64,000 nt of DNA from Trichoplax adhaerens (lineage: Eukaryota; Animalia; Placozoa), in assembly GCF_000150275.1 (NCBI RefSeq), contig NW_002060944.1:3014152-3078151 (forward strand). The letters run 5' to 3'. Below are positions 17,341-37,173 of the stretch, piece after piece. A model generated the notes under the pieces. That model saw only the letters and a list, made by a program, of their open reading frames with translations. It was not told where the DNA came from and searched no databases. Both the position numbers and the translations under genes were made by a program. Position 1 is the first letter of the stretch, and each line of letters begins with the position of its first letter.

Positions 17341-17466
17341 TACGCTTAATCATGCGGCGTATACAGGAGACAGTGGAGTAGAATTACACCAGTTGAGCGT
17401 CGATTGGCTTCTTTTTCCCATCATTCTGCTTAGTTGATCGTCTTGACGCCATCTTGAGTGTTCCCG

Positions 17467-32019: not shown

Positions 32020-33190
32020 CGGTGCGAAACGGTACGGTACAGTATAGTAGTACGAACCGGTCCAGCCTCGATGTCTCCATACAGTAGTACTGTACTGTAC
32101 TGGATGTCCCTCATTGAGCATCATCCAGTACAGTACTGTACAGACATCGGGCTCGAGATGGACCAAGCGTACCGTACCGTACCGTATCGTACCGTGATGA
32201 CAGTCACTGGTCACTGTCTACTGTACACTCACTCAGTGAGTGTACAGTGTCTAGTGTCCAGTCTATTTTGGAACACGTGTGATTTCAGGCTCTACAGTGT
32301 ACAGTAGAAGAGGTTTACAGTATACAGTACTGTACAGCACAAGAGTCAACAGTACTACACATGGTCGCGTATTCAATGAGAATGTGGCATGTGGCTGGAC
32401 AGTGGTCAGATGTCAGCAACTGCCCAAATAGGGTACAGTACTTGTATTGTACAGTGTACTGTACACTGTACACTGTACACTGTACTGTCAGCAGAAATGA
32501 ATCATTCAACAAGTGCCTGCTGCCTGCTTTGAGTACTGTATGCCAAGCATAAATTACAGATTCTGGGGCGTGATACAGTAAATTGGATATTCCAATTTTG
32601 CATCAATTTGTACCAAATAGATGTACCAAATTGATCGCAAATCTACGTGTCGTGCTACTAGTACGACCAGTAGACTAGGACTACTAGTACCACTAGTAGA
32701 CTACTTACTAGTACCACCAGTAGAACCACCAGTAGACTACTTACTAGTACAGTACAGTGTACCACCAGTAGACTACAGTAGTACTCCTAGTACCAAGTAC
32801 TGTAGACTAGTACTACTTGTACTGTACTGTACAGTACTGTACCACCAGTCTACAGTACTACAGTACTACAGTACAGTATTATACTGTACTGTACGGTTGG
32901 CAATTTTCAACGCACCTTTTTATCGACTTGGAAATTTGGACAGTACTGTACAGTACACTGTACTGTACGACTACTGTACTCAGTACTGTACAACCAAAAT
33001 GATGAAATCGGCAGCTCCGACCCTACAGTACTGTACCGTACCTTACAGTGATATGTACTGTAGTCAACGGACTTTCAACTGTAGCTTGGGTCCACAACAG
33101 ATACACGACATACAGTACACTACTGTCTACACTACTGTATGTGACATGCCAACTCAACCCTAGTATTGCCACTGTAGCCCCCTTTCGCCG
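32020..33190. promoter_or_regulatory. Divergent FASTK-C/ATP8 intergenic low-complexity TACAGTAC/TAGTAC tract with nested inverted repeats (putative bidirectional promoter)
   Basis: About 1.1 kb dominated by tactgtacag, gtaccgtacc and tagtaccacc motifs, with hairpins at 32029-32180 and 32220-32248. It lies between head-to-head genes. Confidence 0.5.
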
Positions 33191-33294
33191 ACGGTAAGTA
33201 AACCTGCGACTCGCTTGGACTGCGATTGAAATCGCCATCTTGCTTCCATATTTCATCTTATCTTTCCTGGTTTACAATCAACTAGCGAAAGAAC

Positions 33295-34154
33295 ATGGTA
33301 CGAATTGAACCTGTGAAATGCTTCCATGCTATCAAGTTTGAACCACTAAATTCATTTTTGATTCATTTTATTACAGCTATATAATTCCAGAATTCTGTCC
33401 AGTATCCTTCGTAATGGCCGCATCGCTGGCCTAATCAATGTAAGTTCATGGTGTTGGTACAGTACAAGGCAAATGTTGTCAAAATGTCTTCTGTCAACCA
33501 GATGCGTTACTAGCAGATTTGAGATAGTTCACTATTCTTTCTATATGTACAGTTGTATACCATCATCTTATCATGAATGACAACTTGTGCTGTTTGTTAC
33601 CGTCAAATTCTCTTCAATTCAATATTAGGGAGCCCAGCGTCATCACTCAACTGGTGCACCTCTCGCTATTCGATCATTAGCCGCTCCAGTCCATGATAGG
33701 CAAAGTAAAAAATACATTTCAAATCATACATACCTTGACTACGATAAATAGCTTTTGGGGCTAACTCTTTTTTTGGATAGAATCCTATTTTCTGTCATAT
33801 GAATATTGAATAATAATCGTTCATATGTCATTCTACTGCAATCTTAAAAAGATATACAATCCAATCTTCTTTTCGCTAGACAATTTACAATGGGTTAGAA
33901 ATTTACAAACAACCAGTATCAGACAGTCTGGTATGCCACAACTGGACGTCCCAACTTTTATGCATCAATATGCCTCCTTTTGCCTCTGTCTTTACATATT
34001 ACATGCCATCATAGCAAGGAAAGTCCTTCCCAGGTATTTGCAAGGTCAGAAAATCCGACAATTCGCTGCTGCTAATGCAACTGCTGGAACTGTCGAAAAG
34101 TCCCAGTCAGTTAAAAAAGGCATGGAAACTATGAAGAAGATTTTAGAGCAATAA
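33295..34154 (+). CDS. ATP8: Nuclear-encoded mitochondrial ATP synthase F0 subunit 8 (A6L) precursor, 138 aa; exons 33295-33297, 33377-33439, 33629-33704, 33880-34154
   Basis: Three GT-AG introns splice in frame (phases 0,0,1) to give M|LYNSRILSSILRNGRIAGLIN|GAQRHHSTGAPLAIRSLAAPVHDRQ|NNLQWVRNLQTTSIRQSG-MPQLDVPTFMHQYASFCLCLYILHAIIARKVLPRYLQGQKIR...KKILEQ*. ATP8 hallmarks present: MPQLD (33933), T-F..QY, one TM helix, LP..(K)xR and a basic tail. AATAAA at 34308. Confidence 0.85.
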
Positions 34155-34966
34155 CAATTGTACTTCAATATATTGTACTTATAGTTACGTACTTTGCTAA
34201 CGTTCTAGCTTTAGATCGTTACAGTCAATGCAAAATGTTTTTTCTAACTGTGCTTGATATTGTTATGATGTAAATCCTGCAAGGGATGCATTGCCCAAAT
34301 GGGCCTTAATAAAAAAGACAATCGATGAGTAAGAACTTCCCTTCGTGTAGTAGTTTGCTTAAATGGCTTAGTTCAAATTGTGGTATAATACTTCCAAACG
34401 TCAATATTAGTTATCTTTAACATTCCACTTTCTATGCAACTTTCTTACTCTTATGGTTGCGTTACTGTGATATAATGCAGCAACCACAAAGTTGCAGACG
34501 ATTTTCAGTGTTGTAAGTAATCGGTCGACTCGATACTCCACAGTAATGGCAATTTCAGTCCATACTATTGAGTACTTTCGATTTTTGTACTTGAACTAAT
34601 GCATAGTAATATTTAAAGTACTGCAGCAATTCACCATTAAGAATTTGCATGGTTAAACTCTTCAAGTGGTAAAAGGTACCCTTTACATAATTACTAAAGG
34701 GGATCAATATCCAGCAATAAATAGTAACTTGTGGTTAAGTTTAAATAATAATACTAAACGATGTATATTAGCAATAGGGTCCAATTTCCTATCAATATAT
34801 CGTACAACAACTGCCGTGACAGTGTTGTATGCATTGCGTTGTATCGAGTATAGCAAAGCAGGTTTATTTCTTTCAGTAATAATGAATTATACAGTATTTA
34901 CATCCCAACGAGATAATCATAATCTCATAACACATTTTTAGGACAAAAAGAACCAAATATTGTTTG

Positions 34967-37173
34967 TCACCACCAAAAACTAACAGAAAAACTAATATCC
35001 AAAGACCGCACATAATGCCAACAACGGGGCGGAATATAAAGTAATTGTCCTGGCTCTATGATGCATTCTAGATACTCAGCATTCGCGAAATTCGGATAAT
35101 TTTCAAAATTAGGAAATTCCACATCCACCTGCAATACAATACTTAGCAGTTAGTTTGGTAACTAATTAGTCAAAATTTTTTTACAAATCAATCGGAAGTA
35201 TTTTATTTGAGCAGATCAATGTCTAACCTGACTAGTATTTGATAACAGCTTAGTAGGATATGGATACACATTCTCAGATTCATGCTCAGGATACAAACGT
35301 ATGTACTTTCTACCCATAACCTATCAATGCGCATATATCTTCATCAGTAACAGCACAAAAATTATAAAGTAACTGCAATAACTACACGTATACGAGTAGA
35401 ATAAATTAATGACATAGCTTAGTCACAGCTGCCATCTACGTAAATACAATAAAGAGCAAAAAAATGGAATAACCTGAGCGAATAAATTATGATATGGATC
35501 ATGATGAAGCGGAGAAATTGTGCCTTGAGGCCCAAACCAAGCATTTGTTAAAACTGTTGCATCTACGTCGTCGTTGTTGTCGTCAATAATGCAACAATAA
35601 TCTGGAACACAGATGTCTGTTCTTAGTTCTGGAATCTGCGCTTAGTCATAGATATGAATTTATAAGAAACAATTTTTGGTAACTTAGCATTAAATAGTGT
35701 TCAAGTAGAAGATATAGAAATTAGTAGATCCTATTTCGTGTTTGAAGTATAGAATAAATATTACTAGTAGATTAAAATCAATCAATTAGCCCAGTAATAA
35801 TCCAATAATATATAGAGCAATAAACGCAAGTTGATGGCATAGTCTAGTGCTTTAATGATATGTTTAAATATGCTAAGTACTGTAAATTGAAATTTATTGA
35901 ATATTTTTGTGACGACCTGTTCAAAAAGTTGATGTTGTGCAAGATAACCGGATTCCTGATTGGATTCCTACATATGTTGATTTTGTTGAAATAATTAACA
36001 TCTTAATGTTTTATTATCAGAAAAGATACCCTATACTATATCAATAAATTATTGCTACTAGAGCGAAAATTTTTAAAACAATTACAAACCATAGTAATGA
36101 ACTCATCGATAAACTTAGATAATGGCATCAGCTTTTGCGTCCAACTATCGTCAGTATATCTAGTTCCGATTTCAATTGGCACTGTCCTATGGCCAGCAAT
36201 ATCTTTTAAGCGTTGTATGCTTAATATTGCCATTTAGAAATAAAAAATTTCTATGGTTATAGAGCATTTACTTTAAACTCTATAAAAATAACTGTTTGGA
36301 TTCTTTACCTCCATCTTCTAGCTCCTAAAGCTGGCCAATGATCAATAACATCAGTTAGTATTACAGGCTCCTTCGTACAGAAATAATGTTTTCTAAAGTA
36401 GTCCAATGAAGGACAACTTAATTGTGTAATTTGCCTTTGAGGATCGACTGCAACGTGCTTCCTCCTTTTATATCGATCTAAATAACTCTGCGTCAACAGA
36501 AATTGAGGTTAGCAGAATTAGTAGCTAACAGAAGAAATTCCAATAAACACAATATCCCACGATGCATCAGATATTCTTAAAGTCGAAATGAAGTCAATTT
36601 CATTAATTATAGGACAACAACAAAAGTAGTATAACTTATACTCGAAACGATTGGTATATTCTAAGTTAAATGCATCATATTTACATCATCACTATCGTCA
36701 TTACGGTGATGATCACCAGCATTAGCAAGAGCGTCATCAATGCTCGTAGTCTGTTTGCATGGATGTATGCGTGCGGCGGCTGCTGATATAATATCGTTCA
36801 AGATATTATCTAATATCGGAGCACCCATAAGCAGGCCATAATCTGAAGCATGTATGCACTGTTCCAACTTTCCCATAGCATAGTAGGCTGCAGCTTTATA
36901 AATTGCTCCATAAGTATAAACCTTTCTCCATATCACAGGTACTTCCTTCCAATCACCAGTATTGAGCATTTCCCAGACAATATCAAGAACACATTGGGCT
37001 AGTTGTAAACAACTCTCGAAACGTTCCTCTTTAAAACGCTGCGAGCATATCAACAGGATATCCAATATTCTTTGTCCGCCATAATCCGTTACATTTTTGA
37101 ACTTGTTAATAGTAATTTCTATCTCCTTATCATCTTGCAATCGATGGAAAATTTGCTTCGGTAATGCCGACAT
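34967..37173 (-). CDS. KDM8: JmjC domain-containing protein 5 (KDM8/JMJD5) 2-oxoglutarate oxygenase, multi-exon
   Basis: Motifs [90 protein letters not shown] (HxD) and [21 protein letters not shown]. Confidence 0.96.

What the first reader, a model, noticed from the sequence alone, without database searches (positions are those of the whole stretch)
33295..34154. Spliced nuclear ATP8 gene with a mitochondrial presequence: apparent functional transfer of the 'missing' atp8 to the nucleus
Seen in sequence: four exons with canonical GT-AG borders join in frame to a 138-aa protein. It has a 65-aa Arg/Ser/Ala-rich leader with a single acidic residue, then MPQLDVPTFMHQY, a hydrophobic helix, KVLPRYLQGQKIR and a basic tail, followed by AATAAA. 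The ORF track shows only the last exon. Established knowledge: MPQL(D) and LP..K.R are diagnostic of ATP synthase subunit 8, which is normally mtDNA-encoded in animals, and published placozoan mitogenomes are reported to lack atp8. Inference: this is a functional endosymbiotic gene transfer, not a NUMT, because it has introns, a targeting peptide, the standard code and no flanking mtDNA. I know of no characterised nuclear atp8 in an animal, but I cannot check the literature here.
Basis: partly seen in the sequence, partly recalled or inferred. Interest (0 to 1): 0.95.

Follow-up and report, generated by a model that had tools for sequence, protein, structure and literature searches.

The report
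Nuclear, spliced atp8 gene in Trichoplax
The ATP synthase subunit 8 gene that placozoan mitochondrial genomes lack sits in the Trichoplax nucleus as a spliced, expressed, conserved gene with a mitochondrial-type leader, so it looks moved rather than lost; import and assembly are untested.

Summary
The window is Trichoplax adhaerens nuclear DNA.

- **Gene model:** four exons (33295-33297, 33377-33439, 33629-33704, 33880-34154) total 417 nt, giving 138 codons plus a stop.
- **Splicing:** transcript contigs from three runs in three studies skip exactly the three GT..AG introns. A fourth run holds the unspliced locus.
- **Family:** the last 73 residues (MPQLD, one helix, LP..K.R, basic tail) match Pfam YMF19, the ATP8 family, just above its curated cut-off. 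A profile of three placozoan orthologues finds only one protein outside placozoans among 1.84 billion. That protein is a mitochondrially encoded atp8 lying next to atp4 and cox1 (hhalign probability 96.9%).
- **Leader:** the 65-residue leader has 8 Arg and 1 Asp. It ends in an R-10 processing motif two residues before the ancestral Met.
- **Conservation:** a diverged placozoan has the same exon layout, intron phases and downstream gene. dN/dS is 0.08 for the mature part and 0.16 for the leader.

Import, cleavage and assembly into complex V are inferred, not shown.

Nuclear atp8 is already reported in a demosponge (2025) and in Pleosporales fungi. I found no report for placozoans, which a 2025 paper still lists among lineages that lost atp8. 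This is a new member of a known kind and of solid specialist interest.

The parts
33192..33294 (+). 5' UTR. Transcript contigs begin at 33192-33243. It holds no upstream ATG and contains the conserved motif CGCCATCTTG at 33233-33242.
   Evidence: the motif is conserved in L016
33295..33297 (+). Coding part of exon 1: the start codon only, with A at -3.
   Evidence: the same ATG|GT split occurs in L016 at 405-408
33298..33376 (+). Intron 1 (79 nt, phase 0, GT..AG).
   Evidence: skipped in contigs of X11, X13 and X9
33377..33439 (+). Exon 2: leader residues 2-22, LYNSRILSSILRNGRIAGLIN.
33440..33628 (+). Intron 2 (189 nt, phase 0, GT..AG).
33629..33704 (+). Exon 3: leader residues 23-47 plus the first base of codon 48.
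33705..33879 (+). Intron 3 (175 nt, phase 1, GT..AG).
33880..33932 (+). Start of exon 4: the end of the leader, residues 48-65. The R-10 motif RN|LQTTSIRQ| lies at 33897-33926 and is followed by SG.
33933..34154 (+). ATP8 proper: 73 residues plus TAA. It has MPQLD, a helix that is hydrophobic at about 33957-34016, LPRY..QKIR, and a basic C-terminal tail.
34155..34335 (+). 3' UTR. AATAAA lies at 34308-34313. Transcript contigs end at 34316-34335.

Best explanation
This is the functional nuclear gene for ATP synthase F0 subunit 8 (ATP8/A6L) of Trichoplax adhaerens.

**Shown here**
- It lies on a nuclear scaffold between nuclear genes.
- It is transcribed, its three spliceosomal introns are removed, and the transcript contigs end shortly after AATAAA, which is consistent with polyadenylation.
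- It is single copy.
- Its exon layout, reading frame and protein sequence are conserved in a deeply diverged placozoan under strong purifying selection.
- Its C-terminal 73 residues belong to the ATP8/YMF19 family.

**Inferred**
- The 138-residue precursor is made in the cytosol and imported through TOM/TIM23 by its Arg-rich, nearly acid-free 65-residue leader.
- MPP then cuts after R54-N55, and the intermediate peptidase (Oct1/MIP) removes the octapeptide LQTTSIRQ. That leaves SG-MPQLD...
- The weakly hydrophobic helix is inserted from the matrix side (conservative sorting, Oxa1-type), with the N-terminus facing out. The protein then joins subunit a and the peripheral stalk of complex V.
- The gene left the mtDNA before the sampled placozoan lineages split. 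This explains why all placozoan mitogenomes lack atp8.
For: - **Splicing:** contigs of X11 (an RNA library by its record), X13 and X9, from three studies, show all three joints with GT..AG ends. X1 holds the unspliced locus.
- **Family match:** PF02326 YMF19 scores 23.2 bits (cut-off 22.6) on the mature part. The alignment runs from profile position 1 at the Met. P0003 scores 28.6 and P0002 24.7 bits.
- **Remote homologue:** profile A1 run against 1.84 billion representatives finds only P0005 outside placozoans, at E 3.8e-4. P0005 scores 71.7 bits on YMF19 and lies on a contig followed by Mt_ATP-synt_B and COX1. hhalign of A1 against P0005 gives probability 96.9% over 63 columns, starting at the N-terminus of both. 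BLASTP gives 36% identity over 44 residues, including the LP and K-I/V-R-x-F motifs.
- **Weaker leads:** the only PDB hits are ATP synthase protein 8 chains, and they are weak. The nearest Atlas clusters are cnidarian ATP8, which is a lead only.
- **Copy number:** the gene is single copy in the genome.
- **Orthologue L016:** it has the same four exons and the same intron phases, and also encodes 138 aa. Its downstream KDM8-like gene is syntenic.
- **Selection (Nei-Gojobori):** dN/dS is 0.08 for the mature part (dS 1.41) and 0.155 for the leader (dS 1.03). Introns are 60-65% identical against 77% for the coding sequence.
- **Leader:** composition and the R-10 motif end two residues before the Met. 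The same motif in nuclear ATP9 ends exactly at DIDSAAK.
- **Literature:** placozoan mtDNAs lack atp8 (PMC1781491, PMC5633667).
Against: - The Pfam score is only just over the cut-off. The full-length precursor scores below it (20.6 bits).
- The animal model PF00895 gives no hit.
- The amphipathic moment of the leader is no higher than that of shuffled leaders (1262 of 2000 shuffles reach it).
- No targeting predictor, proteomic data or localisation data were available.
- The mtDNA of this animal is not in the assembly, so its lack of atp8 is taken from papers. One of those papers notes that a very divergent atp8 cannot be ruled out.
- All read evidence comes from Logan contigs. Contigs show joints but not expression levels or exact transcript ends.
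Confidence: 0.88

Rival explanations
1. It is a small nuclear-encoded membrane protein unrelated to ATP8. On this reading, the MPQLD start and the helix resemble ATP8 by chance or by convergence.
For: The profile scores are marginal. PF00895 gives no hit. The predicted structure is a single long helix and cannot discriminate between families.
Against: Three orthologues each pass or reach the YMF19 cut-off. The alignments start at position 1 of the profile and at the Met that follows a processing motif. The only hit outside placozoans among 1.84 billion proteins is a true mitochondrial atp8, with hhalign probability 96.9%. The ATP8 slot is otherwise empty in placozoans, according to the literature.
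Confidence: 0.05
2. It is an ATP8/b-type gene that did not come from the placozoan's own mtDNA. The source would be the rickettsial endosymbiont (the N-terminus of atpF/b') or the mtDNA of another eukaryote, and the gene later took over the ATP8 role.
For: The assembly contains an endosymbiont contig whose b' gene starts MPHLDLTYFF. The best remote hit, P0005, comes from a metagenomic mitochondrial contig of unidentified origin (atp8-atp4-cox1), which need not be animal.
Against: The match to the endosymbiont b' covers only 30 residues at 33% identity. The match to mitochondrial ATP8 covers 44-63 residues and includes the LP and K-R-x-F motifs. The mature length of 73 aa is typical of ATP8, not of b'. 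The nearest Atlas clusters are cnidarian ATP8. About 60 alignable residues cannot resolve a phylogeny, so this rival is weakened but not excluded.
Confidence: 0.04
3. It is a NUMT or a decaying transferred copy without function.
For: None beyond the mitochondrial ancestry of the mature part.
Against: The gene has introns that are spliced out. It has a leader and an intact frame in at least three lineages, with dN/dS of 0.08-0.16 at saturated dS. Its nuclear flanks are syntenic. The assembly contains no COX1 or other mtDNA.
Confidence: 0.01

Closest known systems
Nuclear atp8 of the demosponge Niphates digitalis (Lavrov et al. 2025, PMC11886574)
   Same: Both are animal atp8 genes missing from mtDNA and found in the nucleus. 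Both precursors are 138 aa. Each has an N-terminal targeting sequence followed by a few extra residues before the ancestral Met (three in Niphates, two here).
   Different: The phylum differs, so the transfer was independent. Here the leader is about 63-65 residues rather than 41. The three introns all lie in the leader-coding part. The transfer appears to be shared by diverged placozoan lineages rather than confined to a sub-clade of one order.
Nuclear atp8 and atp9 of Pleosporales fungi (Stemphylium lycopersici, PMC5626475)
   Same: atp8 and atp9 are both absent from the mtDNA. Both are present in the nucleus with N-terminal extensions predicted to be targeting peptides. Placozoans also have both genes in the nucleus.
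   Different: These are fungi and the event was independent. In animals atp9 had generally already been transferred.
Mitochondrially encoded ATP8 / YMF19 (Pfam PF02326; example P0005 on an atp8-atp4-cox1 contig)
   Same: They share the MPQLD start, a single helix, the LP motif, a basic stretch, and a co-linear alignment over 63 columns.
   Different: The mitochondrial form is encoded in mtDNA without a leader or introns. The helix of P0005 is more hydrophobic: the best 19-residue Kyte-Doolittle mean is 2.23 against 1.6-1.9 in placozoans. That is a single comparator.
Nuclear atp6 of ctenophores (Mnemiopsis; Pett et al. 2011, cited in PMC5633667)
   Same: It is an F0 subunit gene of a non-bilaterian animal, moved to the nucleus and reported to have gained introns and a presequence.
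   Different: It is a different subunit. In ctenophores atp8 itself has not been found in either genome (PMC5924465).

Membership tests
ATP synthase F0 subunit 8 (ATP8/A6L/YMF19; PF02326, PF00895, PF05933) | Profile match above the curated threshold | tested here: met
   PF02326 scores 23.2 bits on the mature part (cut-off 22.6). P0002 scores 24.7 and P0003 28.6 bits. The margin is small, and the full precursor P0001 scores 20.6, below the cut-off. PF05933 is only weak (E 0.2). PF00895 gives no hit.
ATP synthase F0 subunit 8 (ATP8/A6L/YMF19; PF02326, PF00895, PF05933) | MPQL(D) at the N-terminus of the mature protein | tested here: met
   MPQLD lies at 33933-33947, invariant in three placozoan sequences. 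It comes two residues after a predicted processing site.
ATP synthase F0 subunit 8 (ATP8/A6L/YMF19; PF02326, PF00895, PF05933) | Small size with one N-terminal membrane helix, followed by a charged, basic C-terminal extension | tested here: met
   The protein is 73 aa. Its best hydrophobic window is residues 79-97 of the precursor. The mature part has 9 R+K against 4 D+E. The model is one continuous helix from residue 6 to 72.
ATP synthase F0 subunit 8 (ATP8/A6L/YMF19; PF02326, PF00895, PF05933) | Homology to a bona fide mitochondrially encoded atp8 | tested here: met
   P0005 sits in an atp8-atp4-cox1 context. hhalign probability is 96.9% with E 1.3e-10. In the library of 1.84 billion proteins the E-value is 3.8e-4.
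ATP synthase F0 subunit 8 (ATP8/A6L/YMF19; PF02326, PF00895, PF05933) | Physical subunit of the F1F0 complex, contacting subunit a and the peripheral stalk | not testable with these tools
   This needs proteomics or a structure. The Trichoplax partner proteins were not in hand for a complex prediction.
Functional mitochondrion-to-nucleus gene transfer | Nuclear location with nuclear neighbours and no flanking mtDNA | tested here: met
   The gene lies about 3.05 Mb along nuclear scaffold C1413. The KDM8-like gene downstream is syntenic in L016. The assembly contains no COX1 anywhere.
Functional mitochondrion-to-nucleus gene transfer | Expression as a spliced nuclear mRNA | tested here: met
   Three GT..AG joints appear in contigs of three runs from three studies. 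The contigs end 8-27 nt after AATAAA.
Functional mitochondrion-to-nucleus gene transfer | N-terminal mitochondrial targeting presequence | tested here: inconclusive
   The composition (8 R, 1 D, no K or E) and the R-10 motif fit a presequence. The amphipathic moment is no better than that of shuffled leaders, and no TargetP or MitoFates run or import assay was possible. The leader is itself under purifying selection, with dN/dS of 0.155.
Functional mitochondrion-to-nucleus gene transfer | Purifying selection on the nuclear copy | tested here: met
   dN/dS is 0.08-0.13 for the mature part and 0.12-0.17 for the leader, across three pairwise comparisons.
Functional mitochondrion-to-nucleus gene transfer | Gene absent from the organelle genome | not testable with these tools
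   The mtDNA is not in the assembly. The literature reports no atp8 in any of four placozoan mitogenomes (PMC1781491) and lists it as lost (PMC5633667, PMC11886574).

The most novel reading that the evidence does not exclude
The 'loss' of atp8 that has been treated as a synapomorphy of Placozoa is in fact an unreported functional transfer to the nucleus. It would have happened in the placozoan stem lineage and would be only the second case known in animals. The transferred gene gained a three-intron leader ending in the same two-step (MPP plus Oct1/MIP) processing motif as the nuclear ATP9 precursor. This would give a natural, phylum-wide template for how the ATP8 helix is made importable.
Probability: 0.65. 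Interest if true: 0.62.

Novelty: new member of a known kind. Interest (0 to 1): 0.58.

Why it matters
- **Resolves a published gap.** Every placozoan mitogenome paper reports atp8 as missing, and a 2025 paper still lists placozoans among lineages that lost it. ATP8 is a structural part of the peripheral stalk and membrane domain of complex V. Whether these animals do without it or import it is therefore a real question.
- **Changes how the character is scored.** A nuclear, spliced, conserved gene shifts the trait from "loss" to "transfer". That matters for how mitochondrial gene content is scored in early-animal phylogeny.
- **Adds an independent animal case.** This is a second, independent animal example for testing ideas about why some genes stay in mtDNA, such as hydrophobicity and importability.
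- **Offers a natural precursor design.** The precursor is relevant to allotopic expression of ATP8.
- **Corrects an annotation.** TRIADDRAFT_63638 is mis-modelled and TrispH2_003950 is labelled "hypothetical protein".

Tried and rejected
tblastn of the three leader exon peptides against 10 kb holding both nuclear ATP9 genes gave nothing beyond a few-residue motif. A whole-genome search with P0001 found no second copy of any leader exon. The shared R-x-L-Q-T-[ST] is the generic R-10 processing motif, so this idea is rejected as evidence of shuffling.
- **Other atp8 candidates in the genome.** The best YMF19 hit, on contig C663, is the b' gene of a bacterial contig carrying tgt, atpB and atpE. 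The hit on C1414 is AT-rich, full of stops and not a gene. The PF00895 hits all have E above 0.8.
- **More orthologues.** A scan of JGI metagenome contigs with A1 found none.
- **Separate nuclear subunit b.** PF05405 gave no match in the exon-by-exon six-frame search. This is uninformative, because introns split the gene.
- **Amphipathic moment of the leader.** It is not above that of shuffled leaders.
- **Fold search.** Not run, because a single 67-residue helix matches any long helix.
- **Joined exon model.** Exons were searched by reference. Whole-protein calculations used the database protein P0001, which equals the exon translations except for K120N.
- **An unrelated literature hit.** One of the three identifiers searched was an accession I guessed from memory. 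Its single hit is unrelated and is not used.

Full report
**What is in the sequence**

The window is nuclear DNA of Trichoplax adhaerens. It maps to G000:C1413:3014152-3078151 in a 105.6-Mb assembly of 1414 contigs. The closest database proteins carry Trichoplax names.

- The ATG at 33295-33297 is followed directly by a GT donor.
- The remaining exons are 33377-33439, 33629-33704 and 33880-34154.
- Exon lengths are 3+63+76+275 = 417 nt, i.e. 138 codons plus TAA.
- Intron phases are 0, 0 and 1, and all introns are GT..AG.
- The 5'UTR covered by transcripts (33192-33294) contains no other ATG, and A stands at -3.
- AATAAA lies at 34308.
- The mechanical ORF list shows only the last exon, 33825-34154.

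Each exon was translated and searched by reference. Whole-protein calculations used P0001 (Trichoplax sp. H2 TrispH2_003950, 138 aa, "hypothetical protein"). P0001 contains the exon translations in order with one difference, K120N.

**Is it spliced and expressed?**

Yes. Logan contigs of three runs from three different studies each carry all three joints with GT..AG ends. The joints are 33296/7 to 33376/7, 33439 to 33629, and 33704 to 33880. The runs are X11, an RNA-Seq library by its record, plus X13 and X9.

These contigs run from 33192-33243 to 34316-34335, ending 8-27 nt after the AATAAA. A fourth run, X1, holds the unspliced locus in one piece. Contigs cannot give expression level or exact transcript ends. 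X11 and X13 carry T at 34100, the H2 allele (K120N), while X9 matches the window.

**Is it ATP8?**

The 73 residues from 33933 match Pfam YMF19 (PF02326, the ATP8 family of plants, protists and many non-bilaterian animals). The score is 23.2 bits against a curated cut-off of 22.6, and the alignment starts at profile position 1 on the Met. Fungal ATP8 (PF05933) matches only weakly.

Two orthologues score higher, P0003 at 28.6 and P0002 at 24.7 bits. The full precursor P0001 falls just below the cut-off at 20.6. The bilaterian-trained model PF00895 gives no hit.

A profile of the three placozoan sequences (A1) was run against 1.84 billion representative proteins. It finds one protein outside placozoans, P0005, at E 3.8e-4. 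P0005 scores 71.7 bits on YMF19. It lies on a 3.7-kb contig directly followed by Mt_ATP-synt_B and COX1, so it is a true mitochondrially encoded atp8.

Further comparisons point the same way:
- hhalign of A1 against P0005 gives 96.9% probability and E 1.3e-10 over 63 columns, N-terminus to N-terminus.
- BLASTP gives 36% identity over 44 residues, including the LP and K-(I/V)-R-x-F motifs.
- Against solved structures, the only hits are ATP synthase protein 8 chains, and they are weak (E about 1).
- The nearest Atlas clusters are cnidarian ATP8, scoring 0.81, which is a lead only.
- The AlphaFold model is one helix from residue 6 to 72 (mean pLDDT 70). That is compatible with ATP8 but not discriminating.

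**Nuclear, single copy, conserved**

The mature part and the whole of P0001 each hit the genome only at this locus.

A Logan contig from another placozoan (L016, 5.4 kb) has the same architecture. The ATG is again split from exon 2 by an intron, and the same three intron positions and phases are present. One extra codon in exon 3 is balanced by one fewer in exon 4, so the product is again 138 aa. A metagenome contig, L020, shows exon 3, the intron and exon 4.

L016 is co-linear with the window through the downstream KDM8/JMJD5-like gene on the minus strand (window 34969-37173).

| Nei-Gojobori, window vs L016 | dN/dS | dS |
|---|---|---|
| Mature part | 0.08 | 1.41 |
| Leader | 0.155 | 1.03 |

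Introns are 60-65% identical against 77% for the coding sequence. So both the ATP8 part and the leader are under purifying selection across a deep split. A NUMT or a decaying copy is excluded as far as sequence can show.

**The leader**

Residues 1-65 have 8 Arg, no Lys, one Asp, no Glu, 7 Ser and 6 Ala. Residues 54-63, RN|LQTTSIRQ|, fit the R-10 motif RX|(F/L/I)XX(S/T/G)XXXX|, and SGMPQLD follows. By established knowledge, this motif marks a cut by the matrix processing peptidase followed by removal of an octapeptide by the intermediate peptidase.

One of the two nuclear ATP9 genes ends its leader in the same motif, SRG|LQTSAAVK|. There it falls exactly before DIDSAAKF. From my own knowledge, that is the conserved mature N-terminus of animal subunit c.

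Beyond this generic motif I found no similarity between the leader exons and either ATP9 locus, and no paralogous leader exon anywhere in the genome. The origin of the leader is therefore unknown.

The hydrophobic moment of the leader is not above that of shuffled leaders, and no targeting predictor was available. Import is therefore well motivated but not shown.

**Mechanism proposed**

Shown: the gene is nuclear, spliced, conserved and homologous to ATP8.

Inferred steps:
1. The precursor is translated in the cytosol.
2. It is imported through TOM/TIM23.
3. It is processed in two steps, leaving SG-MPQLD...
4. The N-terminus is exported from the matrix to give the N-out, C-in topology of ATP8.
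5. The protein assembles next to subunit a and along the peripheral stalk.

The placozoan helix carries His, Cys, Tyr and Ser. Its best 19-residue hydropathy is 1.6-1.9, against 2.23 in the mitochondrially encoded P0005. That fits the idea that transferred genes lower their hydrophobicity, but it rests on one comparator.

All three introns lie in the leader-coding part. The mature part and the last 17 leader codons share exon 4.

**The mitochondrial side**

The assembly holds no COX1, so the mtDNA is not in it. I could not test its content directly.

Signorovitch et al. found no atp8 in any of four placozoan mitogenomes, with the caveat that a very divergent gene could be missed (PMC1781491). 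Later papers treat atp8 as lost (PMC5633667, PMC11886574).

The strongest YMF19 hit in the assembly is not organellar. Contig C663 carries tgt, atpB, atpE and the start of a b' gene (MPHLDLTYFF). It is an AT-rich bacterial contig, probably from the rickettsial-type endosymbiont known in Trichoplax, a link I draw from my own knowledge. That b' gene matches the nuclear protein over only 30 residues.

**Comparison with what is known, and novelty**

Functional nuclear atp8 with a targeting peptide is known in two groups:
- Pleosporales fungi (PMC5626475).
- One animal, the demosponge Niphates digitalis. Its precursor is also 138 aa, with a 41-aa targeting sequence and three extra residues before the Met (PMC11886574).

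In ctenophores, atp8 has not been found in either genome (PMC5924465).

Ten full-text searches found no paper reporting a nuclear atp8 in placozoans or naming either gene model. The library lacks most subscription journals, so an earlier mention cannot be excluded.

The H1 gene model TRIADDRAFT_63638 (P0004) uses another 5' exon and an internal acceptor. It therefore lacks MPQLD and the helix, which would hide the gene from proteome-based searches.

I file this as a new member of a known kind. It is a second, independent animal case, apparently phylum-wide, and it turns a reported loss into a transfer.

**Verdict**

Confidence is 0.88 that this is the functional nuclear atp8. Interest is 0.58: it matters to people working on animal mitochondrial evolution, but it is not a new kind of thing.

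Noticed in passing
G000:C663 (L003 1-1869; L010 1498-1647): This 2-kb AT-rich bacterial contig inside the Trichoplax assembly carries tgt, atpB, atpE and the start of atpF/b' (MPHLDLTYFF...). It is probably from the rickettsial-type endosymbiont. It gives the best YMF19 hit in the genome and could be mistaken for an organellar atp9-atp8 pair.
   Followed up: partly
G000:C1414:10149726-10149914 (-) and 10154896-10155084 (+) (L005, L004, L015): Two nuclear ATP9 (subunit c) genes lie head to head about 5 kb apart. They share the same mature part (DIDSAAKFIGAG...) but have different leader ends, ...SRGLQTSAAVK| and ...SQRN|.
   Followed up: partly
window 33295-34154 versus P0004: The JGI model TRIADDRAFT_63638 (115 aa) has a different N-terminus and skips the first part of exon 4. 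It therefore lacks MPQLD and the membrane helix. RNA contigs support the 138-aa model instead.
   Followed up: yes
window 33233-33242 and 17447-17456: CGCCATCTTG occurs twice on the + strand, against 0.01 expected. The copy in the atp8 5'UTR is conserved in the orthologous locus L016 (about 345-354). It may be a core promoter or initiator-type element.
   Followed up: partly
window 32443-33150: Short tandem repeats built on ACTGTAC/CAGTAC units lie directly upstream of the gene. Similar repeats lie upstream of the orthologue in L016 (250-306).
   Followed up: no
window 34969-37173 (-): A KDM8/JMJD5-like gene (ARM_KDM8_N) lies downstream, with its 3' end facing the 3' end of atp8. It is co-linear with L016, and the best exon shows 57% protein identity.
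   Followed up: partly
window 34100: A G>T difference (K120N) appears in transcript contigs of X11 and X13 but not X9. It is the Trichoplax sp. H2 allele, so these runs come from a sister lineage or strain.
   Followed up: partly
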